A DNA stretch of 64,000 bases, from IMG/VR virus record IMGVR_UViG_3300020380_000001, positions 124,001 through 188,000 of that record, one strand, 5' to 3'. Shown here piece after piece: positions 5,890 to 61,436 of this stretch (positions within the stretch are counted from its first letter, which is position 1; the number at the start of each line of letters is the position of its first letter). Made by a program: the position numbers and the translations under genes. The notes beneath the pieces were generated by a model, which was not told the DNA's origin, did no database searches, and saw nothing but the letters and a program-made list of their open reading frames with translations.

Positions 5890-6271
5890 TTCTTTTTGTA
5901 TCGATGCCTATGTCATTTACGAGGAAGGCGCTGAGACGTTAGCTCTAAGGATTGATCGTGTTGAAGAGCGTGCGCTATTCGAGGAAGTTGCACTGTCTGT
6001 CGAGTTAAGTGGTAACACCTCCTCGCTACTATATGTCGTGAACCACTCCGCCACTTATTTCGGGGAGGATTTTGAGTTGTGGTGTAGTGCCCCGGCCTCT
6101 CCTGAACACTTCAGATATGCATCTCGCGGAATGCGACTGGAACATATGTTAATGAAAGCTGGACTAAAAAACCAATTCAATAACGGTATAATATTGTTTG
6201 AAAACTGGCGCACTCCGGAAGAGCGCGACGAGGCAGTGACTCTTTTAAAATTACAGCACGGTGGCGTATAA
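5834..6271 (+). CDS. hypothetical protein
   Basis: 145-aa ORF; start uncertain. Confidence 0.65.
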   Translation: MINNVALRPVRVIVETTNDSFCIDAYVIYEEGAETLALRIDRVEERALFEEVALSVELSGNTSSLLYVVNHSATYFGEDFELWCSAPASPEHFRYASRGMRLEHMLMKAGLKNQFNNGIILFENWRTPEERDEAVTLLKLQHGGV

Positions 6272-16578: not shown

Positions 16579-19512
16579 ATGTATATTGACGCAATAAAAG
16601 ACGCTAAGAATAATAAAATACACACGGTCAACAGAGTTAACGGCGAGCGAATCTATAAGTCGTACCCAATTGACTGGTCTTTTTATTACGACGATTCAAC
16701 CGGTGAACACATGAGCTGGTATAATACACCAGTTAAGAAAGTGGAGCCGTCAAGCGCTGCTGACCATAAAAAGTTGGTAGGGTCTTTTGGCAACCGCAGA
16801 CTTTATGAGTCTGACGTTAACCACGTGTTTAGATGCTTAGAGCAACATTACCCTGATACAAGTCAGAGTCCCAACTTGCATGTTGCTTTTTTCGATATCG
16901 AGACTGACTTTGACGAAGAAATGGGATATTCGTCACCGACAGAAGCATTTAACCCTATTACGTCAATTGCTGTATACTTGCAATGGTGTAATACTATGGT
17001 GTGTTTGGCTGTGCCGCCTCCTACATTATCGCGGGAAGAAGCAAAAGCCATCGCCGCGCAGGTCCCTGATGTTATACTGTGCGCCACTGAAAAAGAAATG
17101 CTACAAGATTTCCTGAGCATTATTGAAGATGCTGACGTGTTGTCTGGCTGGAACAGCGCAATGTACGATATTCCGTACACTATTCACCGCTTGCAGAAAA
17201 CTATAGGCGGCGAAGCTGCACGACAAATGTGCCTTTGGGGACATATGCCACAGCGCAAGAAAGTGAATCACTTCGGTAAAGAAGAGGTGACATATTCACT
17301 TATAGGCCGTCAGCATTTGGATTATCTTGATCTGTACAAGAAGTACACGTATGAAGAGAAACAAAGTTACAAGCTGAACTCAATTGCAGAAGCCGAGCTT
17401 GGCGAGCAGAAAGTTGAGTACCAAGGTACACTTGATGACCTGTATAAGAAAGACTTTAAAAAGTTTTTAGAGTACAACATTCAAGATACCAAGCTACTTG
17501 ACAGCCTAGACGAAAAGCTAAAGTATATTGACTTAGTTAACACCATTGCACACAACAACCAGGTGCCAATCCAAACAGCGCTAGGCACCGTGTCCATGAT
17601 GGAACAGGTCATCACAGTTGAGGCGCACAACAACGGGTTTATAGTTCCAGACAAACGTAAAGATATTACGGATGATGGACAAGCCGCTGGTGGTTGGGTT
17701 AGTAAGCCTAAGAAGGGATTACATCGCTGGGTAGGCAGCTCGGATTTGAACTCACTTTATCCGTCAGTTATCCGTGCATTTAACATGAGTCCTGAAACGA
17801 TTGTTGGGCAGGTAGATATGTCTTACACTCGTAGTTGTGTTGAAGAATACATCGCTAAAGGATCCAAGTATACGTTCTCTGGCTGGTGGAATGATCGTTT
17901 CAATATTCTTGAAATGGAAGCGTTTTACGATGGCAGCAAGACTACACCTGTTAAACTGCACATTGAAGACAACGGCAAGAAGGGTCCTATCCTTGATATA
18001 ACAGGGCGTGAATTACGCGATGTTATATTCAGTGAAGACCACGACTGGTGTATAAGTGCTAACGGGACTATTTTTGATAATAGTCGTCAAGGCACTGTGC
18101 CTAGCTTGCTTTCAAGATGGTATAACGAACGTAAACAATTACAGAAAGTAATGAAGCGTCTTAAGTTCCTTGCCGCAGCCAACTACGAAGTGCCCAGCGA
18201 TCTAGTTGCGCAATTTGCAGTTGATGAAGAAAAAGAACTTACTAAGAGTGACGTTTACGACTTTCCGCTTGATGCGTTTGACGAGATGGTCAACAACAAA
18301 GACGTTGAGGCACTCAAAAGCTTTATGGACACCTGGGGCTTGACTGTGCATAACGGGCACTTTGCGCCTTGTCCTGCTTGGAAGACTGCGTACACGTATG
18401 CATGTGACTATTGGGATAAACAACAATTAGTTCGTAAGATTAACCTGAACTCGTGTTACGGTGGACTACTGAACGCCCACATGAAGTTCTACGATCAACG
18501 AATTGGTCAGAGTACTACACTAAGCGGGCGCTCAATCACGCGTCACATGACTGCTAAGACTGCCGAGTTGCTAGAAGGCAAATACGACATAGAAGACGTG
18601 AAGTCTATTATCTACAACGATACTGACTCTGTGTATTTCTCAGTATGGCCTGTAATCAAAGACAAGGTAGAAGCGGGCGAAATGGAATGGAACAAAGACA
18701 TAGCTGTGAAGCTGTATGACGATGTATCCGATCAGGTAAGTGACACTTTCCCTGAGTTCCTTAAAACGAAGTTCAATGTGCCTGAGCACCGTGGATCTAT
18801 TATCGCAAGTGGGCGTGAAATTGTTGCTGAGTCTGGATTGTATATTACCAAGAAACGTTATGCTGCACTTGTGTATGACGATGAAGGTGTAAGACGTGAC
18901 ACAGACGGCAAGCCCGGTAAGCTAAAAGCCATGGGTCTTGACTTGAGACGAAGCGACACCCCTGTTTATATCCAGGAATTTTTAAAAGAGATTCTGTTGG
19001 ATACGCTACAAAACAAAGGTGAAAGCTATGTTGTTGACAAGATACTTGACTTTAAGAAAAACGTACAAGGCAAGCTTAAGCCATGGCAACGCGGTGTACC
19101 GAAAGCCGTAAACGGCATGTACAAGTACACCAAAAAGAAAGAACAGCACATCGAGAATCTGATGCGCGGTGTGAAGTCATCCTTGGCTATCCCGGGACAC
19201 GTACAAGCCAGTTTTAACTGGAACGAGTTACTCGAATCCAATGGCGATATGGAGTCTACTAAGATAACAGACGGCACGAAAGTTATTGTGTGTTACTTAA
19301 AGACTAACGAGCGCAACTATACGTCGGTTGCGTACCCGGTGGACCAGTCACGTTTACCTACTTGGTTTACTGATTTGCCATTTGACGTTGATGACATGGA
19401 AGAGCGTGTTCTTGACAAGAAAGTAAGTAACTTACTTTCAGTGCTTAAATGGGACTTAAGCATGGCTAGTAAACAAGGCGAGGTATTTGGTAACTTGTTT
19501 ACTTTTAATTAA
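16579..19512 (+). CDS. gp43: family B DNA polymerase (gp43-like)
   Basis: Exo I FFDIETD, Exo II WNSAMYD, Exo III YNIQD, Pol A DLNSLYPS, B KINLNSCYG, C YNDTDS. Confidence 0.97.
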   Translation: MYIDAIKDAKNNKIHTVNRVNGERIYKSYPIDWSFYYDDSTGEHMSWYNTPVKKVEPSSAADHKKLVGSFGNRRLYESDVNHVFRCLEQHYPDTSQSPNLHVAFFDIETDFDEEMGYSSPTEAFNPITSIAVYLQWCNTMVCLAVPPPTLSREEAKAIAAQVPDVILCATEKEMLQDFLSIIEDADVLSGWNSAMYDIPYTIHRLQKTIGGEAARQMCLWGHMPQRKKVNHFGKEEVTYSLIGRQHLDYLDLYKKYTYEEKQSYKLNSIAEAELGEQKVEYQGTLDDLYKKDFKKFLEYNIQDTKLLDSLDEKLKYIDLVNTIAHNNQVPIQTALGTVSMMEQVITVEAHNNGFIVPDKRKDITDDGQAAGGWVSKPKKGLHRWVGSSDLNSLYPSVIRAFNMSPETIVGQVDMSYTRSCVEEYIAKGSKYTFSGWWNDRFNILEMEAFYDGSKTTPVKLHIEDNGKKGPILDITGRELRDVIFSEDHDWCISANGTIFDNSRQGTVPSLLSRWYNERKQLQKVMKRLKFLAAANYEVPSDLVAQFAVDEEKELTKSDVYDFPLDAFDEMVNNKDVEALKSFMDTWGLTVHNGHFAPCPAWKTAYTYACDYWDKQQLVRKINLNSCYGGLLNAHMKFYDQRIGQSTTLSGRSITRHMTAKTAELLEGKYDIEDVKSIIYNDTDSVYFSVWPVIKDKVEAGEMEWNKDIAVKLYDDVSDQVSDTFPEFLKTKFNVPEHRGSIIASGREIVAESGLYITKKRYAALVYDDEGVRRDTDGKPGKLKAMGLDLRRSDTPVYIQEFLKEILLDTLQNKGESYVVDKILDFKKNVQGKLKPWQRGVPKAVNGMYKYTKKKEQHIENLMRGVKSSLAIPGHVQASFNWNELLESNGDMESTKITDGTKVIVCYLKTNERNYTSVAYPVDQSRLPTWFTDLPFDVDDMEERVLDKKVSNLLSVLKWDLSMASKQGEVFGNLFTFN

Positions 19513-45323: not shown

Positions 45324-45446
45324 GGGTGGAGAGTAAGGAATCGAACCAAATCCGCCGGCTTGGGTTTAATGAAAACTTGCTGTTAGAATACTAATACAGT
45401 ATTCGTTTCATTCGGGGCCGGAGTGCAACCATTACACTTCATCTCC
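45324..45446 (-). ncRNA. tRNA-like gene with structured insert in the anticodon loop (degenerate scaffold)
   Basis: D arm GTGT/GCAC, anticodon stem CCGGC/GCCGG, TTCGATT T loop, imperfect acceptor, ends ACCC; insert carries the 27-nt core at 45378-45404. Confidence 0.65.
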
Positions 45447-45466
45447 ATATTCGCTATTATACGTTT

Positions 45467-45703
45467 TTACTTGTTAGTGTCAAGTAGTTTTAGCAAATTT
45501 TTTAAAAATTCTGGATCTTGTTGTTGGACTGGCGCAGTAGTTGGAATTGGAACGGCGCGTACAAACTCGGGTTCTTTATTTCGTTTGCATGACATGACAC
45601 ATCCGCATGTCATATCAAAAGCAGATTCACCAAAACCGTGACTCACGATGTCTTCTACTTCAGTGACACAGTTGCAATTGGTGCATATTATTATTTCATT
45701 CAT
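45467..45703 (-). CDS. small Zn-ribbon-like protein
   Basis: CxxCxC...CGCxxxC. Confidence 0.6.
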   Translation of the reverse strand: MNEIIICTNCNCVTEVEDIVSHGFGESAFDMTCGCVMSCKRNKEPEFVRAVPIPTTAPVQQQDPEFLKNLLKLLDTNK

Positions 45704-45752
45704 TATAGTTGCTCATATAACAGATGGGCCAAAGGTATCGCGGATAGCAGGG

Positions 45753-46124
45753 CTAAAGGTACTCTATGTCTATTACCTTAGCACTAGGCACAGTGAACTC
45801 AGTCTCACGATCAGTTATATTACCAAAAATGATATCGTTTGGGTTGAACTCAAACGTTACCAGTATTTCTTCTTCTGCTAGGCCGCTATAATAGTCAAGC
45901 ACATAATCACGGTCAAGTGACATGTAAATGCCGTTACCGGGCATTCGCATCGTATCGCCTTTCTTTATATCAAGCACTATGCGATTGTTGGCGCCTGCTA
46001 CTACTTTGCCGTTTTCTATGGCCATGACTTTATAGCCGGTCATAGTTTGATTTCCGGCAATGTTTTCAGCCATGCTACGTAGTACAGCCGATACATCATC
46101 CTGAAAAAGTTCATCTAAAATCAT
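45753..46124 (-). CDS. late protein, possible ADP-ribosyltransferase fold
   Basis: GNGIYMS...YY...ETEF pattern; TAAATA at 46149. Confidence 0.45.
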   Translation of the reverse strand: MILDELFQDDVSAVLRSMAENIAGNQTMTGYKVMAIENGKVVAGANNRIVLDIKKGDTMRMPGNGIYMSLDRDYVLDYYSGLAEEEILVTFEFNPNDIIFGNITDRETEFTVPSAKVIDIEYL

Positions 46125-46175
46125 ACAAGTTCCCGTTAGTTGTTACACTATTTATATGATTTTAGTTGAACGCTT

Positions 46176-46433
46176 TCAATCCTGTGCGGGAAAGCGAACA
46201 GCAACCTGATTGCCATTTGTGTCAATACCATTGACAGACCAGGTTTTGTTAATATGATTTTGACGCACCATGGCAGTCAATGTCACAGATTCACCAGTTG
46301 TGAACTCCACGAGCATCTTACACATATGGGTGTCAACAAATTGCAGATCATCAAAGTCCACAGATTCGACAACGCGGGTGTCATACCCGCGATATCGTTT
46401 ACTAAACCATTTGAGTGTTATTACTTCCATCAA
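46176..46433 (-). CDS. hypothetical protein
   Basis: 85 aa. Confidence 0.65.
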   Translation of the reverse strand: MMEVITLKWFSKRYRGYDTRVVESVDFDDLQFVDTHMCKMLVEFTTGESVTLTAMVRQNHINKTWSVNGIDTNGNQVAVRFPAQD

Positions 46434-46810
46434 CCTCTCGCTTGTTTCATTGCTTCAATATCATCTTCGTCGTACAAATACGCATCACCAACAGCGTCGT
46501 GGGCTGGGCTACCGTAACGCGGCGCTACAGCGTACCATAAATCTGAACGGTGTAATTTGGGATAGCGGCCTTCTTCAGAAATTTTATGACGCATAATGTT
46601 TAAGCGCTCACGTTGCAAGTTCAAATCTTCGCTTGCAGCAACATGGCGATAACGCTTACCGTTGAATAATTCAACTTGGAAATAATAAACATCAACGATG
46701 ACGTTTTCACCGTCTTCAGTGTAATGACCAGCTTTATATTGCTTATCAGAAACAATCTCAAGCGAATGTATTTGAACGCCTTCTAGGGCTTTGGTGTACT
46801 TGTCTGTCAT
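46430..46810 (-). CDS. hypothetical protein
   Basis: 126 aa, strong promoter upstream. Confidence 0.75.
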   Translation of the reverse strand: MTDKYTKALEGVQIHSLEIVSDKQYKAGHYTEDGENVIVDVYYFQVELFNGKRYRHVAASEDLNLQRERLNIMRHKISEEGRYPKLHRSDLWYAVAPRYGSPAHDAVGDAYLYDEDDIEAMKQARG

Positions 46811-46845
46811 ATCGTTTTACCTTGTTTTGTTAGTTTACAATAGAT

Positions 46846-46873
46846 ATGATAGCGCCTTGAGCGTCAATGTCAA
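46846..46873 (-). promoter_or_regulatory. early sigma70 promoter with UP element
   Basis: TTGACA-16-TATCAT, A/T tract upstream. Confidence 0.7.
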
Positions 46874-47129
46874 GGCCTTTTTGAAGAAAAATTAAAAATT
46901 ATTCTTATTCAGCTTAGCTCTGCACGAGTCGCTGCGTCAAGCAAGTCAGTGATAGTTTTCAAGTAGCCTAGACGCAAGTTAACACCGTGGCCGTCGCAAT
47001 CATTGCCAACGTAGCGCGCCATTTCTTCTCTCAGTGCTGCCGCCGACATGTTTTGTAATTTTTCAAATGCTTTGTTTTTCATGATATTACCTTATTAATT
47101 GGGAGGAAGGGAGGGTTGTTAAACAACCC

Positions 47130-47402
47130 TTAGCGTAAGTAAGTTTGCTTCAAACTGTCAATCCAGTTTGTCATGCTTACTAGTTGCTTCTGAGTCATGC
47201 GCTCAGTGCCTGCCAATTCAAGCACTTCGTCTAACATGTAACCAATTTGGTCGCTGTTAGCGTAGTAAGGATTATTTTTGCTTAACACATAACCAGTGTT
47301 ACGTGTACGACGCTTAACGAAATTTTTAAGGTCAGCCACAGTGTGCTTTGGCTTTTCAATCAACGCTAGCTGTTCTTTTTTAATGCTGTTCAAAGTGTTC
47401 AT
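47130..47402 (-). CDS. hypothetical protein
   Basis: 90 aa, SD AAGGT; terminator hairpin right after the stop. Confidence 0.75.
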   Translation of the reverse strand: MNTLNSIKKEQLALIEKPKHTVADLKNFVKRRTRNTGYVLSKNNPYYANSDQIGYMLDEVLELAGTERMTQKQLVSMTNWIDSLKQTYLR

Positions 47403-47443
47403 AGTGTCTTACCTTTGTTTGTTAAATGTCGTCTTCAGTATCT

Positions 47444-47471
47444 ATATTACTACCTTGACGACCAAAGTCAA
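47444..47471 (-). promoter_or_regulatory. early sigma70 promoter with UP element
   Basis: TTGACT-16-TAATAT, A/T tract upstream. Confidence 0.65.
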
Positions 47472-47507
47472 CACCTATTTGAAAAAAATTTCAATTATTT
47501 TTCGACA

Positions 47508-47951
47508 CTACTTTAGGAAGCATTTTGACATTAAGCTGCCGGCAGGTATAATAATATAGTACACCGCGTTGTCACCGTGTCCCATTTCATTCCAAAAAAA
47601 CAACACATAATCACCTGAGTTTATTTCCTGGATTACTAACGACTCACCGTGCATTTCGTTAATGCTAAACGGATCAAGGTTAGTGTTGTATTGCACCGGC
47701 GCGGATATAAATTCCAAACCATCTCGCTCTACGCCAATTAAATCAGCTATCACTGACTCATCAGCGTCAACAATATAAAGGTAAAAACCTTCCACGCTAG
47801 GGTCAAGATTTATAATACCGTTGCACAGCACGTTTGATACCATGCCCGGAGGGATAGGGGTATGTAACACAGAACCAGGGCGTATAAAAGAAAGTGATGA
47901 AAGTCCCGATCTAACAATGCCGTCAACGGTGTTTGCGATTAAGTGAGTCAT
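47508..47951 (-). CDS. hypothetical protein
   Basis: 147 aa. Confidence 0.7.
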   Translation of the reverse strand: MTHLIANTVDGIVRSGLSSLSFIRPGSVLHTPIPPGMVSNVLCNGIINLDPSVEGFYLYIVDADESVIADLIGVERDGLEFISAPVQYNTNLDPFSINEMHGESLVIQEINSGDYVLFFWNEMGHGDNAVYYIIIPAGSLMSKCFLK

Positions 47952-48004
47952 ACTATTGCCTTTTTAAGAATTAGTTCAAAGACAGTATTACATGGTGTGA
48001 GATT

Positions 48005-48176
48005 GAAAACAAGACTATTCGCGAGTTGTCTTGCCGGTCATTTGTTCCTACCTTCTAATTGCCATTTAGTAAGGCTGACCCCGGACCTTCCCCTAACAAG
48101 TTAGGCTAGCTGGTTAAGTAGCTGGCTGGGCTACACAGCACATACGGCTCCAGTTTGTCGCGATCCGGTCTTTTTC
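48005..48176 (-). ncRNA. candidate structured ncRNA
   Basis: ORF-free about 170 nt with CCTAAC/GTTAGG, CCTT(A)CTAA/TTAGAAGG and CAAGAC/GTCTTG hairpins, and possible GACC-GGA/TCC-GGTC pairing. Confidence 0.4.
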
Positions 48177-48178
48177 GT

Positions 48179-48457
48179 TTAATCCTTGGATGTCTTTTCA
48201 ACATCCTCGATATTCTGCATTACATCCTGTCTGAATGCTTTATACGCGCTCGCTAGTACATCAGGTCGCGTTAAACCAATCCACCACGACATAATGTTAT
48301 TGATTCTATTTGAATCGTCAGACGGTGCCTGTGGCGTTTTAAACCAATGAAATACAGTTAGCATACCTAGCAGGGTAAAGAATATACCGCCAACTGAGAG
48401 TAAAAATAAGAATAGTGACAGAATCATAGAATCTCCTTTTCTTTTATTTACTCTCAC
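48179..48457 (-). CDS. small membrane protein
   Basis: N-terminal TM; likely start at MILSLF. Confidence 0.7.
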   Translation of the reverse strand: MRVNKRKGDSMILSLFLFLLSVGGIFFTLLGMLTVFHWFKTPQAPSDDSNRINNIMSWWIGLTRPDVLASAYKAFRQDVMQNIEDVEKTSKD

Positions 48458-48941
48458 CGACTGCTGACTTTATCAGTTCTGCCTCGCCGCTTGCGACGAT
48501 GTCAAATTCAGCTTGCGCTTTCTTGAATGCTCGTTGCTTTTTCTCTTTGAGTGCGGTTATTTCGTCGGCATACGCATTAATAAAGTGCGCTTTGCCTTCC
48601 GGGTTTAGTAAGTTCCATAAGTAGAAAACTGACACGAAATCGTTATACGGGTTGTCAAGCTTGGCACGCAATACTTGTACTGAATTAAAGTACTCAACCC
48701 CACGAAGTTCGCGCGGGTATGCGCCACTTATTTCGATATTGTATTCTTTATTTTCGTGACGAGTCCAGCCATTACTTTTGCCAAGAAAATCGCCCTCGAC
48801 TTCAGTGAATTCAATATCAAAGTATGACATGAATGTTTTCATTTCAATGCGTGCTGGTTTCTTGAAGTTGATTGTATTTCTATCAACGGCCGCGGCAATG
48901 GTTTCAATACCAGGCGACAGGATAAAAGCTTCTTTCATCAC
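48444..48941 (-). CDS. hypothetical protein
   Basis: 165 aa. Confidence 0.75.
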   Translation of the reverse strand: MMKEAFILSPGIETIAAAVDRNTINFKKPARIEMKTFMSYFDIEFTEVEGDFLGKSNGWTRHENKEYNIEISGAYPRELRGVEYFNSVQVLRAKLDNPYNDFVSVFYLWNLLNPEGKAHFINAYADEITALKEKKQRAFKKAQAEFDIVASGEAELIKSAVGESK

Positions 48942-48955
48942 TTACTCAATAAGGT

Positions 48956-49032
48956 TGGAGCACACTGCGGGATTCGAACCCGCGTAATCTGGATTTGCAA
49001 TCCAGTGCCTATATCCACTCGGCCAAGCGTGC
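48956..49032 (-). tRNA. tRNA-Cys(GCA)
   Basis: Full cloverleaf, CTGGA-TTGCAAA-TCCAG, U73, encoded CCA. Confidence 0.95.
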
Positions 49033-49039
49033 TTTATAT

Positions 49040-49279
49040 TTAAGAACAAGAAGTTGCAACAAGCGCAACGGCGTCAACTAGTGCAAGAATTTCATTTTCA
49101 GTTTTGTTTTCTAAACTCTCAAAACATATGTCCATTGACGTACAATCAACGAACTGGAGTTCGAACGAGTCAGTCATTGTCGGAATTACGCCGACGTGAA
49201 ACATAATCGGTGCCTTGTCGCGAATACGTGCAGACAATTCGTTAAAGAATTCTTTTGAAATAATCTTCTTGTTTGTCAT
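49040..49279 (-). CDS. hypothetical protein
   Basis: 79 aa. Confidence 0.65.
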   Translation of the reverse strand: MTNKKIISKEFFNELSARIRDKAPIMFHVGVIPTMTDSFELQFVDCTSMDICFESLENKTENEILALVDAVALVATSCS

Positions 49280-49287
49280 CTTTTTTC

Positions 49288-49866
49288 CTAGTATGTACTT
49301 ACGTCTTGTGCGAACTCGTCGCCAAATCCAACCAATAACTCAGTCATGTTTTGGCAATCAAGGTAGTTGGCAGCGTGCACATCTGCAAAAACAGCAACGT
49401 CACCGCGCTCGCGGGGCTCTAGCATTTCTGTCGATCTAGCTAAAGTTTCGACGTCCATTTCATAATGTGATTTGATGTACGCACCGTTTACAATGCTACC
49501 CAGACGCTGTCCATCTGCGTTGCCGCCATATACCATGAATTCTTCCACGATATAGTTACCAATTGGCATTGAGAATGATTCACTGTCAATCACTGCGATA
49601 CGGTATTCACCGATTTCGCACACTAACACACCTTCAAGCCCAGTAGCACCTTCGTGCTTTACTAGATCAGGCGTTTTAAGCATAGATATAACTTCGTCTA
49701 TGTGTTCTTGACCTTTGCATAGTGCAAGGCTTGTGCCGTCAGAGCCGCTAATATCGAGTTCAATACAAGCCGGTGGTGTTACGCTTGATTGGCAGTAAAA
49801 TGTACCTTCGAGGTTAAGTTTACTGCCCGGGTAGTGGATTTCTACCTTGTGCGGTACGAGTTCCAT
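49288..49866 (-). CDS. hypothetical protein
   Basis: 192 aa, SD GGAG. Confidence 0.75.
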   Translation of the reverse strand: MELVPHKVEIHYPGSKLNLEGTFYCQSSVTPPACIELDISGSDGTSLALCKGQEHIDEVISMLKTPDLVKHEGATGLEGVLVCEIGEYRIAVIDSESFSMPIGNYIVEEFMVYGGNADGQRLGSIVNGAYIKSHYEMDVETLARSTEMLEPRERGDVAVFADVHAANYLDCQNMTELLVGFGDEFAQDVSTY

Positions 49867-49956
49867 GATCGTTCTCCGTTACGTAAAGTCCAATTACTCT
49901 ACTTCGTGCATTATAACACCGGATCCAAATCAGTCAACTGTTTTGTGAAAAATGAT

Positions 49957-50100
49957 TTATTTCTTTTTCTTCTTGTCTTTTTTGGCTGGTGTTGCTTTTT
50001 CTTCAACTTTTACTTTAGGTACGCTAACTGCTTGAGGTTCAATGTTATTTGCAAACACTGATTCTATTAGTTCAACAAACCATATTCCGTTTTTTCCCAT
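49957..50100 (-). CDS. small Lys-rich peptide (47 aa)
   Basis: SD GGAGG; MGKNGIWFVEL...KKDKKKKK. Confidence 0.55.
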   Translation of the reverse strand: MGKNGIWFVELIESVFANNIEPQAVSVPKVKVEEKATPAKKDKKKKK

Positions 50101-50238
50101 ATATCCTCCGTTATTATGATGATGGTGACCCTAGTGAAAATTAAACAAGCTTGATGGCGAGGTTAGATTCAGAAGGAGACGGTCTTATAAGTATATACTA
50201 GAAAATTTCATTAATTACCGGCATGCGGTGTAAAGAAG

Positions 50239-50359
50239 TGGTAGGGAGTGCAGGACTCGAACCTGCGACCAACGGCTTATCAGGCAAAAAGGATATGCTG
50301 TTAGAATACTAATACAGTATTCATTTTTACGTTGCTCTACCCAACTGAGCTAACTCCCT
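50239..50359 (-). tRNA. tRNA-Ile(GAT) interrupted by a 44-nt insert (50286-50329) between positions 29 and 30
   Basis: Removing the insert gives a perfect 77-nt cloverleaf: AGGGAGT/ACTCCCT, GCTC/GAGC, ACGGC-CTGATAA-GCCGT, GCAGG-TTCGAGT-CCTGC, ACCA. Confidence 0.85.
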
Positions 50360-50570
50360 AGAAGTTTCTAATGAACTGTCTTAAGTCTTTGACACCTCCA
50401 CATCCGAGTATTATTAACCCACCTAGTGGCAACATGCTAAAAATACCTGCGAGTGCGTTAAACGCGAAGCAGTATATGATGGCCATTACTAAACCAATAT
50501 TAAGGGTTAGTATACCAGCCATCAAAAGCATTGCACAAAAACGGGCTAATGTTTTAAATGTTGTTTCCAT
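50358..50570 (-). CDS. membrane protein
   Basis: 70 aa, two TM segments. Confidence 0.7.
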   Translation of the reverse strand: METTFKTLARFCAMLLMAGILTLNIGLVMAIIYCFAFNALAGIFSMLPLGGLIILGCGGVKDLRQFIRNF

Positions 50571-50591
50571 TTTCTTAGTATGAACCCAAGT

Positions 50592-50867
50592 TTACTTTTT
50601 GTCAAGGAATTTTTTAAAATCGCTGTAAATTTCTATACCGGCTTCATCAACTTCTGATTGTGTCAAAAACGCCGAGTCCGAGTACAATGTGCCGTCGCGT
50701 TTAATGAAGTAAAACCGATCATCGACTTTGCCCAACACAGCACCCCGTTCCAAAAGTCCAGGCACCATATCAATCAAAGAGTCTGCGCCAAACACGGTGC
50801 CCTTAAACAATTCAGCATCAGGCACTACACCAATCAAAACGCTGGTAACATCATCTATTGTTGCCAT
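50592..50867 (-). CDS. hypothetical protein
   Basis: 91 aa, SD GAGG. Confidence 0.7.
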   Translation of the reverse strand: MATIDDVTSVLIGVVPDAELFKGTVFGADSLIDMVPGLLERGAVLGKVDDRFYFIKRDGTLYSDSAFLTQSEVDEAGIEIYSDFKKFLDKK

Positions 50868-50868
50868 G

Positions 50869-51216
50869 TTAACCTCGCTTACATTTAACGGGTAGCGTTA
50901 AATAATTCCCTGTATCGAACTCTGCGATGCGCATGAGGAACTTGCGCTCCGCGATGATGCCGCGCTTTTTGCCTTTGACGGAAAGTTGGCAGCGATAGTG
51001 ACCATCCCAGAGTTTGCGTTGGAGTTTCTTTAGTTCGCCGGACTTGATTGAGTACACTTCTTCGCGCTCAATAGAAACATAGTAACCTGGCGCTTTTGCT
51101 ATTGGGTATAGTAGATCTGATTTGTCTAATTCGACGGCATCACGGGGCGGGGATAAATGTTGCTCGTTAAGCCGGTCTAGCGCCGCTAGTACAGCTTCTT
51201 TAATTCTTTTAATCAT
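50869..51216 (-). CDS. NUMOD4-like (homing-endonuclease-associated) basic protein
   Basis: YPIAKAPGYYVS...VYSIKSG..LKK...GHYRCQL pattern; no HNH motif seen. Confidence 0.45.
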   Translation of the reverse strand: MIKRIKEAVLAALDRLNEQHLSPPRDAVELDKSDLLYPIAKAPGYYVSIEREEVYSIKSGELKKLQRKLWDGHYRCQLSVKGKKRGIIAERKFLMRIAEFDTGNYLTLPVKCKRG

Positions 51217-51235
51217 AGTAACCTCAAGTTAAGGT

Positions 51236-51340
51236 TGCCGGGCCAAGGAATCAAACCTCGTTCGGGTGCGTACTTGCGAAGTTTGCTGCGACAAATCTAA
51301 TACAGACTTGATGGAGTTCCCTCAGAATCATTCACCCGGC
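51236..51340 (-). ncRNA. tRNA-like gene carrying a variant of the 27-nt core
   Basis: GCCGGGT/GCCCGGC acceptor, CGAGG-TTTGATT-CCTTG T arm; CAAGTC-TGTATTA-GATTTG-TCGCAGCA at 51284-51310. Confidence 0.6.
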
Positions 51341-51930: not shown

Positions 51931-52875
51931 TCATCGTTTCGATTTCTTTTTAGGTTTTGGTTTATATGTAGGCTTTGGTTTCGGCTTATACTTTGGTTTC
52001 GGCGCGTAAGTCGATTTCGGCTTTGGTGTAAAAGAACTTGTGCTGGCCTTAGGAACCGGCTTACGGGTAGTTATTGTCTGATTAGCTTTAGGCGTCTGGG
52101 TAGTGGTAGACGATGCTGCCTTGGCATTAGCGTTAGCCGCAGCGCGGTTTTTCTTACAGGTCGTAGTCGTGCAGTTATTCCACGCGCTGTCTTTGTTGCC
52201 CGTCTTCTTGCTACCCCATCCACCTTGCGCTACTGAGCTCGATTGTGTTTTGGGCTTCGTGTCGGTTGTCTTTGGCTTTGATTTGATCTTAGACGACACT
52301 GTCTGTTTAGTTTCGGTATACTTGCGCTTGCGCACATTATACATGGCATCGCTTGACGACTTACGTCTACGATAGTCAGCCTCTGAGATTGACTTACCGT
52401 CCGACGACGTGTAGTTATTAACAGTGACGTTTGTAGTGCGCCATCCGCCTGGGTTAGAACTTTCCCAGCTGTTACGGGTTAATGCATATGCCGCTGATGC
52501 TGCTAGTACGCCGGTTGCTATTTGATACGACACGTAGTTTCTAGACTGCTGGGCATAGATGCTATTAGGGTCATGCCATTCCCAGTTACCAAACGCGTTC
52601 CAGTGGCCGTACTGCAAATTACCGCGGTAATCAACATAAGCGCCCGGCGCTACGGGGCGGTTGTAATACGCCATTCTTTCTTCATGTCTGGATTTGTTTA
52701 GTTGCTCATAGTAGCCTGACTCAATTCTTGCCAGCTCTAATTCATGCTGACGAGCGCGGCGTAACTCTTTTTCTTCAGCTGTTTCGCAACCACTTAAGCT
52801 GCTACCAACCAATACAATACACAGTGCCACTACCACGGTGGTTATTGTATTCCTTACCGATTTACTGATTTTCAT
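51931..52875 (-). CDS. lipoprotein with Lys/Ser/Thr/Pro-rich disordered tail
   Basis: Signal peptide with LSGC lipobox; KPK repeats at C-terminus. Confidence 0.8.
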   Translation of the reverse strand: MKISKSVRNTITTVVVALCIVLVGSSLSGCETAEEKELRRARQHELELARIESGYYEQLNKSRHEERMAYYNRPVAPGAYVDYRGNLQYGHWNAFGNWEWHDPNSIYAQQSRNYVSYQIATGVLAASAAYALTRNSWESSNPGGWRTTNVTVNNYTSSDGKSISEADYRRRKSSSDAMYNVRKRKYTETKQTVSSKIKSKPKTTDTKPKTQSSSVAQGGWGSKKTGNKDSAWNNCTTTTCKKNRAAANANAKAASSTTTQTPKANQTITTRKPVPKASTSSFTPKPKSTYAPKPKYKPKPKPTYKPKPKKKSKR

Positions 52876-52927: not shown

Positions 52928-54913
52928 TTACTCGCCTTTCTTATCCGTAGATAGGAACTGTGCAATGTTGTTGGTCGTGCCAAGTAATGTGGCTGCCGCT
53001 GTGGTACTTTCGCCACCGTCGCCGCCTACAAATACAGTAGCAGTTTTAACCATTTCTGGGTTCTTAACAGCACCGTCTACAGCCATTTTAAATAACACCT
53101 GCTCTTGTACTTTCTCTTCACCCATTACAGCTACTAGCTCGCGCTGACCTTTCGCAGCTTCAATATCACGGTCACGCATACCCTCACCCTCTTTCTTAAG
53201 TTCATAAGCGCGGGCATCAGCTAGCTTTTCACGTTCGGACTTGATCTTGTCAGCCGCTTGGTCACGTAGTTCAGCAGTAACAACAATCTTCTGATTTTCT
53301 GCTTCTACACGGGCTGCCTCTGAGTCTTTACGTTGCTCGTAGGTAGCTTGCTCTTCCTTAAACGTGTTTTGTAACTGTCGAGCATAGTTAGCACGCATAC
53401 GCGGGATAAGAGACTCAACTGGTAAGTTAGGATGACCCATAGTCTGGATGTTAATTCCCAGACCGTAGTCAGAAACAAACTCGTTAAGTGCTGTAATGCT
53501 TTCCGATTCAATCTCTGCGCGGTTGTTGATCAAGTCAAATAAACGTCGACTTTCGTCAACACATTCTTGATCCTTATACGTGCCCGCAGCGTACTTGAGC
53601 TTTTTGCCTTCGTACACATCGTTTTCGTACACAGCACAGCGCATGATATCCTGGCCTTGTGCTGCAATACGGAACGTACTTTCAATTGGGTTTTTAAGGA
53701 ACTGCTCCACAGCGTGTAAGCCTGTGTTTCTGTCTTGCACGAAGTCACCGATTGTTGCAACTACCAGAGGCGCGTCAACAACTTGGTATTTCGTTTTCAA
53801 ATCAATAGGCACTGTCCAGCCTTCTACCACTACATCAATGGCTTCGCCTTCCGCGTTAGCTGGTTTAGTGATAGTGTCAGATCCAATGATGTTTTTGATC
53901 TTACCGTCATCTTCCATTTCAAACGATACGGTTTTCTTAACGTATCCGCCGAAACGGTCAAAGTCTTGCTGGCGAGTAGGTACGTGGGTAATCGTATACA
54001 CTTTAGGGTGGAAACGATACGTTTTAGGCTCAAGGTGTTCGTTCCATACGCCAGCACAGCCCTTAGGCACTAAGTAAGTAACCGCACCATTAAACGAACG
54101 TACTTCTCTACGATTATCATTACAAAATTCACTAGGCAAGTCGTCTGTAGCTGAACGCACAACGCCTACTTCACCAGTTCTAATGTCTTCCGCAGGGTAG
54201 TTTTTAAAGCTGTATAGGATTTTGTTTGCCATGATCACACCGCCTGTTACTAGCGTTGACTGATCACCGCGGTAACCAAGCTTGTTGCCGTTGCTGTCAG
54301 TTTTAGATAGGAATGTCGCAGCATCAAGGAATTCGTTTTGGTCCTGCCATTTTGGCGCAAGGATCATGTCGTCTGACATTGGACGGCCATCACGTGTATT
54401 CACGATAGCGAAGTGGTTCGCAGGAATGCTGTGAGGCTTAGTCAAGTCAATTTCAGTACCGTTGATCTCAATCTCGTCTAGCTCTGTATACAAGACATCA
54501 ATTAACGGGAACCATTTAAAACCAGGTGTGAATACTGTCGCTTGTGGGCCTTTCATGCCACCGAACGGGTTCGCTGTCATTGGCTTAGTTGCAACATAGT
54601 GTCCAACTGGGAGTGGTTCACCACCGTATACACGAGAGAAGTGTTTGATTTCACCGTCACTAACGTATACTGAGTTGAGGTCAACCATCAACACAATTAC
54701 CAACACCGTCGCGATTACTGCCGGAAACTTGGAAACGACACGAACAATGCTCTTAGCTACTTTTGCATGGGGCGATTCGTTTCGTCTACCGTACTGATCT
54801 TGTTGCGATGAATGTTGCTCTGATTGTTTTTGAAGTTTTTCTCGCTTCTTGCGCGTCAGTGCGAAATACACGAGATAGATTATTCCTACGAGTAGGAGTA
54901 GTAACTTGAACAT
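52928..54913 (-). CDS. SPFH/band-7 (flotillin-like) membrane protein
   Basis: N-terminal TM segments, repeated beta region (GEVGVVRS, GVWNEHLEPKTYRFHP), SPFH-like core and C-terminal coiled coil. Confidence 0.75.
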   Translation of the reverse strand: MFKLLLLLVGIIYLVYFALTRKKREKLQKQSEQHSSQQDQYGRRNESPHAKVAKSIVRVVSKFPAVIATVLVIVLMVDLNSVYVSDGEIKHFSRVYGGEPLPVGHYVATKPMTANPFGGMKGPQATVFTPGFKWFPLIDVLYTELDEIEINGTEIDLTKPHSIPANHFAIVNTRDGRPMSDDMILAPKWQDQNEFLDAATFLSKTDSNGNKLGYRGDQSTLVTGGVIMANKILYSFKNYPAEDIRTGEVGVVRSATDDLPSEFCNDNRREVRSFNGAVTYLVPKGCAGVWNEHLEPKTYRFHPKVYTITHVPTRQQDFDRFGGYVKKTVSFEMEDDGKIKNIIGSDTITKPANAEGEAIDVVVEGWTVPIDLKTKYQVVDAPLVVATIGDFVQDRNTGLHAVEQFLKNPIESTFRIAAQGQDIMRCAVYENDVYEGKKLKYAAGTYKDQECVDESRRLFDLINNRAEIESESITALNEFVSDYGLGINIQTMGHPNLPVESLIPRMRANYARQLQNTFKEEQATYEQRKDSEAARVEAENQKIVVTAELRDQAADKIKSEREKLADARAYELKKEGEGMRDRDIEAAKGQRELVAVMGEEKVQEQVLFKMAVDGAVKNPEMVKTATVFVGGDGGESTTAAATLLGTTNNIAQFLSTDKKGE

Positions 54914-61356: not shown

Positions 61357-61436
61357 TGGCGCAGGTGTAGGGAGTCGAACCCTCAAGTCTCTCGACACGG
61401 TTTTGGAGACCGCTTTGCTCGCCAATGCGCACCTAC
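61357..61436 (-). tRNA. tRNA-Trp(CCA) with unusual variable-arm hairpin
   Basis: GTAGGTG/CACCTGC, GCGGT-CTCCAAA-ACCGT, G73, CCA; GTC-GAGA-GAC extra arm, weak D stem. Confidence 0.8.

What the first reader, a model, noticed from the sequence alone, without database searches (positions are those of the whole stretch)
45324..51340. A conserved 27-nt hairpin module inserted into three different tRNA scaffolds, with covariation
Seen: the RNA-strand core GAAUAC-UGUAUUA-GUAUUC-UAACAGCA is identical at 45378-45404 and 50296-50322. A third copy at 51284-51310 reads CAAGUC-UGUAUUA-GAUUUG-UCGCAGCA. It has the same length, the same 7-nt loop and the same CAGCA tail, but a different 6-bp stem that still pairs (compensatory changes). 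Each copy lies in the anticodon region of a different tRNA-shaped gene. In the first two copies a different short closing stem flanks it (AAUGAAA/UUUCAUU; AAAAA/UUUUU). CUGU at the stem/loop edge could pair with ACAG/GCAG in the tail as a pseudoknot. Established: bacterial tRNA introns are large group I/II ribozymes, and archaeal short introns use bulge-helix-bulge motifs; this element matches neither. Inference: either a new class of short, enzyme-excised phage tRNA intron, or a protein-binding/decoy RNA carried on a stable tRNA scaffold (for example against anticodon nucleases or toxin-antitoxin defences). This is the best candidate for an undescribed system in the window.
Basis: partly seen in the sequence, partly recalled or inferred. 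Interest (0 to 1): 0.9.

Follow-up and report, generated by a model that had tools for sequence, protein, structure and literature searches.

The report
Ro60-linked hairpin inserted in phage tRNAs
The repeated 27-base hairpin is real and belongs to a widespread, apparently undescribed RNA module that sits like a short intron in the anticodon arm of tRNA genes of large phages and, in phages and giant viruses alike, is encoded close to a viral Ro60-like RNA-binding protein, which points to a tRNA-bodied relative of Y RNAs.

Summary
Three copies of a 6-bp hairpin followed by N3 and CNGCA lie on the minus strand; none is expected by chance. E2 is a tRNA-Ile(GAU) gene with a 44-nt insert between nt 29 and 30 of the anticodon stem. 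E1 is a degenerate tRNA-like gene. E3 keeps only an acceptor stem and a T arm.

The same module occurs in the 113-124-nt 'tRNA-Pseudo' genes of Vibrio phage KVP40 and relatives. It also occurs in Aeromonas T4-like phages, in cyanophages, in a 735-kb megaphage and in many metagenomic phages. In giant-virus contigs it forms tandem arrays outside any tRNA. Across 33 copies the stem covaries strongly. The loop U-G...A and the CNGCA tail are invariant. No Rfam family covers the insert, it has no bulge-helix-bulge motif, and it is too short for a group I or II intron.

A ~470-aa DUF2828+vWA protein with a predicted Ro60 fold is encoded near the module far more often than in control loci. In a mycobacteriophage the same protein family sits next to a YrlA-like Y RNA.

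Best reading: the module is the handle for this Ro60-like protein, grafted into tRNA bodies. Whether it is also spliced out is not known.

The parts
50239..50359 (-). E2: tRNA-Ile(GAU) gene interrupted by the module. Exon 1 is 50330-50359, the 44-nt insert is 50286-50329, and exon 2 (with CCA) is 50239-50285.
   Evidence: ARAGORN -i calls tRNA-Ile(gat) with a 44-nt intron. The joined exons give stem ACGGC/GCCGU and loop CUGAUAA.
50296..50322 (-). Module core copy 2: 6-bp hairpin, loop UGUAUUA, UAA, CAGCA.
   Evidence: R1, 40.0 bits.
45324..45446 (-). E1: degenerate tRNA-like gene (anticodon-like CCC, no U33, mismatched acceptor and T stems) with the module inside the anticodon loop region.
   Evidence: Rfam tRNA 22 bits with a 56-nt insertion. 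ARAGORN at a lowered threshold. Comparison with the orthologue in L034.
45378..45404 (-). Module core copy 1, identical to copy 2.
   Evidence: 39.1 bits. It is 27/27 identical to the L034 orthologue, while the exons are 56/66 and the flanks 23/30 identical.
45456..45483 (-). Sigma-70-type promoter (TTGACA-16-TATAAT, 12/12) ending about 9 nt upstream of E1.
   Evidence: This is a consensus match only.
51233..51340 (-). E3: scaffold with a tRNA-type acceptor stem and T arm but no canonical D or anticodon arm, carrying the module.
   Evidence: Not called by ARAGORN or Rfam.
51284..51310 (-). Module core copy 3 (stem CAAGUC/GAUUUG).
   Evidence: 33.4 bits. The L034 orthologue keeps the pairing through a C:G to U:G change and has a loop one base shorter.

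Best explanation
The hairpin-N3-CNGCA element is a conserved RNA handle for a viral Ro60-like protein (DUF2828 + vWA, about 470 aa). In large phages it has been grafted into the anticodon arm of tRNA genes. It usually lies after ...ACG in the 5' strand of the anticodon stem.

The transcript is then a complete tRNA body with an extra arm branching from the anticodon stem. This is the same place where the Ro60-binding stem emerges from the tRNA-like domain of bacterial YrlA Y RNAs. By analogy with Ro60/Y RNA particles, the handle would bind the Ro60-like ring, and the tRNA body would engage tRNA-recognising enzymes (processing, repair or host nucleases).

Shown here: the motif, its covariation, its placement, its distribution and its genomic linkage to the protein. 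Inferred: the binding itself and the role of the particle.

The module may in addition be cut out and the exons joined to give a decoding tRNA, as E2 and its relatives suggest. That step is not shown.
For: 1. The RNA structure is real. In 33 copies 93.4% of stem cells pair, against 66% in shuffles and at most 43% when the partner is slid. Five of six pairs show changes on both sides. G:U pairs occur on this strand only.
2. The distribution is wide:
- KVP40 'tRNA-Pseudo-3/4/5' plus one unannotated gene, and phage nt-1
- V07, F86, Ahp1 and the 735-kb megaphage LR756501
- Aeh1
- the cyanophage BUCT-ZZ01; B3 matches by blastn but reaches only 18.3 bits with R1
- metagenomic phages
3. All six complete module-carrying phages that were checked encode the DUF2828+DUF7788 protein. 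In BUCT-ZZ01 and B3 the gene lies directly upstream of the module-bearing tRNAs.
4. The AF2 model (pLDDT 74.8) has four full-length top matches, all Ro60/TROVE proteins, with E about 1e-6 and probability 1.0.
5. The link does not depend on tRNAs. In giant-virus contigs, tandem arrays of the module lie 130-200 nt from a divergently oriented DUF2828 gene (L117, L213, L226, L228).
6. Enrichment: 8 of 35 module loci carry the gene. Among 116 pattern-selected loci only 1 does, and that one is L117. Among 120 tRNA-bearing control loci none does. Those controls also have no R1 hit (100 of them, 766 kb, searched).
7. In mycobacteriophage Moostard the same protein family is followed by a YrlA-like Y RNA.
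8. The core is better conserved than its tRNA host in E1, and it is also carried by the non-tRNA scaffold E3.
Against: - No binding data exist.
- No DUF2828 gene is present in the 64-kb window. The rest of the ~306-kb genome could not be read.
- Only about 10 of 80 DUF2828 loci carry the module. FelixO1-like phages and Lak-B1 have the protein but no module.
- Many giant-virus arrays lie next to a DnaJ-like gene instead.
- Part of the phage linkage could be indirect, because the protein gene itself sits in tRNA clusters (74 of 80 loci).
- The module does not resemble the bulged-stem Ro60 site of known Y RNAs and does not match Rfam YrlA.
- The exact restoration of anticodon arms is explained more simply by splicing.
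Confidence: 0.5

Rival explanations
1. It is a genuine short tRNA intron of a new, protein-dependent class. An endonuclease cuts after ...ACG and before the last 2-3 stem nucleotides. An RNA ligase (Rnl2-type nick sealing, Rnl1/Pnk or RtcB) then rejoins the exons. The hairpin-CNGCA is the recognition element, and the Ro60-like protein may act as a cofactor. The only product that matters is the mature tRNA.
For: - Virtual removal restores a 5-bp stem and a 7-nt loop with U33 and a purine at 37, for anticodons GAU, UGU, GUU, UCU, GUC, GCU, UAG and CAU.
- The joined E2 sequence resembles ordinary contiguous phage tRNA-Arg(UCU) genes.
- Between the window and L034, the E2 orthologues differ at 2 of 3 anticodon bases but at only one other exon position. 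This suggests selection on decoding.
- The intron nearly always starts with UA and ends in a pyrimidine.
- Excision from the stem would leave a nick in a duplex, which is the preferred substrate of Rnl2-type ligases (my own knowledge).
Against: - The distances from the module to the two junctions vary: 5-11 nt on the 5' side and 8-13 nt on the 3' side.
- There is no BHB motif.
- No ligase, kinase or endonuclease family was found among about 90 window ORFs.
- E1 and E3 cannot yield canonical tRNAs, yet they keep the module perfectly.
- Several relatives give 8-nt loops after removal.
- The giant-virus arrays have no exons at all.
Confidence: 0.3
2. It is a selfish miniature DNA element that inserts at ...ACG/TA sites. 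The interrupted tRNA genes are pseudogenes, as the database annotation says.
For: - The genes are annotated 'tRNA-Pseudo'.
- Cores within one genome are nearly identical: E1 and E2, the two BUCT-ZZ01 copies, and the F86 copies.
- The insertion context is recurrent.
- E1 is decaying.
Against: - The module is conserved, with compensatory and G:U changes on one strand only, across Vibrio, Aeromonas, cyanobacterial and giant viruses.
- No terminal repeats or target duplications were noticed when the junction sequences were read; no repeat search was run.
- The exons stay intact and the anticodons evolve.
- The core is under stronger constraint than its flanks.
- The element is linked to a specific RNA-binding protein.
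Confidence: 0.08
3. It is a small self-cleaving or self-ligating ribozyme that excises itself.
For: Invariant unpaired bases (UG...A, CNGCA) lie next to a variable helix, and the 5' flank is A-rich.
Against: - No match to any Rfam ribozyme family, even at E<=10.
- Two cuts at variable distances would be needed.
- There is no supported tertiary pairing.
Confidence: 0.05

Closest known systems
Ro60 / Y RNA particles, especially bacterial and phage YrlA (Rfam RF02553)
   Same: The partner protein has the Ro60 fold (HEAT-repeat ring plus vWA) and is encoded nearby. The RNA has a tRNA-like body, and the protein-binding element is attached at the anticodon-stem position. Phage examples are known (PMC4201824, PMC12135203, PMC7824862).
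   Different: There is no match to the YrlA model. The handle is a 6-bp hairpin plus single-stranded CNGCA, not a bulged terminal stem with the CGAA motif. The body is a full tRNA with an anticodon loop. The protein belongs to the DUF2828 branch. In giant viruses the handle occurs in tandem arrays.
Archaeal and eukaryal protein-spliced tRNA introns (bulge-helix-bulge)
   Same: They are short and sit in the anticodon arm, including non-canonical sites such as 29/30. Their removal is exact.
   Different: No BHB can be drawn. The hosts are bacteria. A conserved internal hairpin-CNGCA is not a feature of BHB introns.
Group I introns in bacterial and phage tRNA genes
   Same: They interrupt the tRNA anticodon region in bacteria and phages.
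   Different: The insert is only 40-47 nt and has no ribozyme core or Rfam match. It lies mostly in the stem, not the loop. The 5' exon ends in G and the insert ends in U or C.
'Enigmatic' tRNA introns of Lak megaphages (PMC6784885; bioRxiv 10.1101/356790) and the KVP40 'tRNA-Pseudo' genes
   Same: These are over-long phage tRNA genes, flagged as pseudogenes, whose inserts are highly conserved. Lak-B1 also encodes the DUF2828 protein.
   Different: Those reports define no motif and no partner. R1 found no module in the 17 kb around the Lak-B1 gene.

Membership tests
tRNA (Rfam RF00005) | Cloverleaf scoring above the gathering threshold | tested here: inconclusive
   E1 scores 22 bits against 29. 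E2 and E3 are not reported. E2 is a canonical tRNA once the insert is removed. Relatives such as KVP40 P3-P5, BUCT_B and B3 score 50-55 bits despite the insert.
BHB (archaeal-type) tRNA intron | Two 3-nt bulges carrying the splice sites, separated by a 4-bp helix | tested here: not met
   In 8 introns with defined ends the central helix forms 0-3 of 4 pairs, and the outer helices are weak.
Group I / group II intron | Ribozyme core of a few hundred nt with conserved helices | tested here: not met
   The inserts are 40-47 nt. There is no Rfam match at E<=10.
Known self-cleaving ribozymes (hammerhead, twister, pistol, hatchet, HDV-like) | Match to the family covariance model | tested here: not met
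   No match at E<=10 over the three loci.
Y RNA (YrlA, RF02553) | Match to the YrlA model: terminal Ro60-binding stem plus T and D arms | tested here: not met
   The window gives only a 15-bit partial hit (E 6.5), driven by the D arm. There is no hit in the module loci. As a positive control, the Moostard RNA scores 37.9 bits.
Y RNA (functional definition) | Encoded near, and bound by, a Ro60-family protein | tested here: inconclusive
   Proximity and enrichment are shown, as is the Ro60 fold of the protein. Binding cannot be tested with these tools, and no such gene lies in the window.
Ro60/TROVE protein family (for the partner protein) | HEAT-repeat ring plus C-terminal vWA/MIDAS domain | tested here: met
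   The Foldseek top four matches are Ro60 structures aligned over about 510 columns. Pfam gives DUF2828 + DUF7788/VWA. The sequence-level match to PDB TROVE chains is not significant (E 0.48).
Miniature transposable element | Terminal inverted repeats and/or target-site duplication | not tested
   None was noticed when the junction sequences were read. No dedicated repeat search was run. The stem changes are RNA-type (G:U) on one strand only.

The most novel reading that the evidence does not exclude
These are the first enzyme-spliced short tRNA introns of bacterial viruses. A Ro60-like ribonucleoprotein recognises the hairpin-CNGCA handle and organises cutting at ...ACG|UA and resealing of the nicked anticodon stem by a phage RNA ligase. 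That would give Rnl2-type nick-sealing ligases and phage Ro60 homologues a natural substrate.
Probability: 0.25. Interest if true: 0.92.

Novelty: new variant of a known kind. Interest (0 to 1): 0.8.

Why it matters
Hundreds of phage genomes carry over-long 'pseudo-tRNA' genes that are ignored in annotation. This work shows that many of them share one structured, covarying module. It also ties that module to an abundant but uncharacterised viral protein family, found in 711 phage records, that has the Ro60 fold.

If the pairing is real, it defines a new architecture of Ro60/Y-RNA particle that spans bacteriophages and giant viruses of eukaryotes. It also offers a tractable model in KVP40, nt-1 or Aeh1 for what viral Ro60 systems do with tRNAs. 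If the insert is in addition spliced, it would be a new class of tRNA intron in the bacterial world.

Tried and rejected
- **Pseudoknot between the loop edge and the tail.** It rests on invariant bases or on pairs that often fail. It shows no covariation and is no better than shuffles.
- **Closing stems flanking the module.** They are not conserved in L034, BUCT-ZZ01, Ahp1 or LR756501.
- **BHB motif.** Absent.
- **Rfam.** Searched at gathering and at E<=10. Nothing covers the insert.
- **T4 stable RNAs rnaC/rnaD as possible homologues.** No R1 hit.
- **Brute-force deletion scan with ARAGORN.** Too permissive to define the junctions, so they were set by hand from stem complementarity.
- **Pfam and PHROGs on ORFs around the three genes and across the window.** Almost all have no hit. 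No RNA ligase, kinase, endonuclease or DUF2828 protein was found.
- **megablast against phage genomes.** No close relative.
- **L061 and L027-type motif hits.** Judged to be chance or unresolved.
- **Profile search of the partner protein against PDB sequences.** Not significant. Only the fold comparison links it to Ro60.
- **Literature searches.** No description of the motif was found. The KVP40 genome paper was not available.
Full report
**What is in the window.** On the minus strand, three sites share a 6-bp hairpin with loop UGUAUUA, three bases, and CAGCA. Two cores are identical (45378-45404 and 50296-50322). The third (51284-51310) has another stem that still pairs. The pattern TGTATTAG-N8-CAGCA occurs 3 times, against 0.00 in shuffles.

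Standard ARAGORN and Rfam at gathering thresholds report seven ordinary tRNAs but none of the three loci.
- **E2.** With introns allowed, ARAGORN calls 50239-50359 as tRNA-Ile(GAU) with a 44-nt insert. By hand, the insert lies between G29 and G30 of the anticodon stem. Its removal gives stem ACGGC/GCCGU and loop CUGAUAA.
- **E1.** The gene at 45324-45446 scores 22 bits with the Rfam tRNA model, has mismatched acceptor and T stems, and lacks U33. A perfect sigma-70-type promoter precedes it.
- **E3.** The gene at 51233-51340 has an acceptor stem and a T arm only. Its best consensus fold is a long imperfect stem tipped by the module.

**The phage.** The window has no close relative among sequenced phages. 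Identical stretches occur in a 306.5-kb IMG/VR contig, and a diverged 310.7-kb relative (L034) has orthologues of all three genes. Family B DNA polymerase, T4-type DsbA and Y01A suggest a distant T4-like jumbo phage.

In L034 the E2 orthologue has anticodon UGU instead of GAU on an otherwise almost unchanged body. The A5/U5 'closing stem' is lost. In E1 the 27-nt core is 27/27 identical, while the exons are 56/66 and the flanks 23/30 identical.

**The family.** A distant blastn hit led to Synechococcus phage BUCT-ZZ01, which has two neighbouring tRNA genes with a homologous insert. From there the same architecture was found in:
- the KVP40 'tRNA-Pseudo-3/4/5' genes plus one unannotated gene, and nt-1
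- V07, F86, Ahp1 and the 735-kb megaphage LR756501
- Aeh1 and, more weakly, B3; phiAS5 matches by blastn only
- metagenomic phages

The typical layout is as follows. The 5' exon ends ...ACG at nt 28 or 29. The insert begins UA, followed by an A-rich run. Then come the hairpin, N3-4, CNGCA(A), and 8-13 more bases ending in a pyrimidine. The 3' exon supplies the rest of the stem. In some genes the insert lies in the loop instead (KVP40 P4 and P5, and E1).

Removal restores canonical arms for anticodons GAU, UGU, GUU, UCU, GUC, GCU, UAG and CAU. A few genes give 8-nt loops. The joined E2-type arm is the ordinary arm of phage tRNA-Arg(UCU) genes, with 64/77 identity over the whole tRNA. So one scaffold carries several anticodons.

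**Structure.** In a 33-sequence alignment, 93.4% of stem cells pair. The figure is 66% in shuffles and at most 43% when the partner is slid. Five of six pairs change on both sides (the 21-sequence version is). Invariant positions are the second stem pair A:U, the loop U-G...A, and C-N-G-C-A.

Neither pseudoknot register has covariation support. No BHB motif can be formed. No Rfam family matches the insert. Model R1 finds nothing in the T4 tRNA region, including rnaC and rnaD, and nothing in 766 kb of tRNA-bearing control loci.

**The partner.** In BUCT-ZZ01 and B3 a ~470-aa gene lies directly upstream of the module-bearing tRNAs. KVP40, Aeh1, phiAS5 and Ahp1 have homologues, which RefSeq annotates as 'RNA-binding protein' in KVP40, Aeh1 and phiAS5. 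All are DUF2828 + DUF7788/vWA. An AF2 model of a metagenomic member has four top full-length Foldseek matches, and all four are Ro60 proteins, including a Thermus phage Ro60.

The family is abundant: 711 phage records and at least 584 viral contigs. It sits in tRNA clusters, with tRNAs within 10 kb in 74 of 80 loci. About 10 of those 80 loci carry the module.

The most telling evidence is independent of tRNAs. L117 was fetched only through the DNA motif. It is a giant-virus contig (NCLDV capsid gene) in which a six-unit 68-nt tandem array of the module lies about 130 nt from a divergent DUF2828 gene. A second motif scan found 35 loci, many of them giant-virus arrays. Three more arrays (L213, L226, L228) show the same divergent arrangement. 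In total, 8 of the 35 loci carry the gene. The comparison figures are 1 of 116 pattern-selected loci (L117 itself) and 0 of 120 tRNA-bearing control loci.

Other arrays follow a DnaJ-like gene. In mycobacteriophage Moostard the same protein ('Ro-like RNA binding protein') is followed by a YrlA-like RNA. Published work shows that Ro60 homologues of bacteria and phages pair with nearby tRNA-like Y RNAs (PMC4201824, PMC12135203, PMC7824862).

**Interpretation.** The best-supported reading is that the module is the RNA handle of this Ro60-like protein, and that the phage genes encode tRNA-bodied Y-RNA analogues. The anticodon arms are exactly complementary across the insert, and the anticodon changes selectively. 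So excision and ligation remain a serious possibility, and the two readings are compatible.

Limits: there are no expression or binding data. No partner gene, ligase or nuclease lies within this 64-kb window. Many genomes with the protein lack the module. The held literature mentions only 'enigmatic' tRNA introns in Lak megaphages and does not describe this motif.

Noticed in passing
L129-L208 (viral contigs); L209:5959-7374: The DUF2828+vWA Ro60-like gene is embedded in phage tRNA clusters. 74 of 80 loci have tRNA genes within 10 kb. In FelixO1-like phages it is the gene directly in front of the tRNA array, yet no module is found there.
   Followed up: partly
window 50239-50359 vs L034:7249-7369; L122:8001-8119; L123:7994-8107; L001:2999-3112: One tRNA-Arg(UCU)-like scaffold with the insert at 29/30 carries anticodons GAU, UGU, UCU and GUU in different phages. 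This is anticodon switching on a conserved body.
   Followed up: partly
L119:2495-2618; L193:3253-3372; L205:627-747; L178:~6100-6215: After virtual removal of the insert, several relatives have 8-nt anticodon loops: an extra A in front of a canonical 7-nt loop.
   Followed up: no
L212, L216, L223, L233, L237, L241, L242, L244: In giant-virus contigs, many module arrays (period about 64-76 nt, 2-6 units) lie 50-80 nt downstream of a DnaJ-domain gene or a fucosyltransferase-like gene rather than next to DUF2828. Each unit also holds a second small hairpin.
   Followed up: partly
L210:5569-5677: A YrlA-like RNA lies directly after the Ro-like gene of mycobacteriophage Moostard. It scores 37.9 bits, below Rfam's gathering score of 69, so routine annotation would miss it.
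   Followed up: no
window 40000-64000: Nearly every minus-strand ORF in the tRNA-rich half of the window has no Pfam or PHROG match. This includes a 661-aa ORF (52928-54913) and a 314-aa ORF (51931-52875) just upstream of E3.
   Followed up: partly
window 17134-17257 and 61357-61436 (minus strand): At a lowered threshold ARAGORN reports a 'tRNA-Asp(gtc) with 30-nt intron' and a 'tRNA-Trp(cca)'. The first lies inside the DNA polymerase ORF and is probably spurious. The second lies in the tRNA cluster.
   Followed up: no
L120:22507-22962; L118:972-1427; L125:7953-8411: Gene 57B, annotated 'RNA ligase', lies close to the tRNA region in KVP40, nt-1, F86 and T4. T4 has the gene but no module.
   Followed up: no
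window 47525-47552 (+): A second perfect 12/12 sigma-70-type promoter match lies on the plus strand, opposite to the local gene direction.
   Followed up: no
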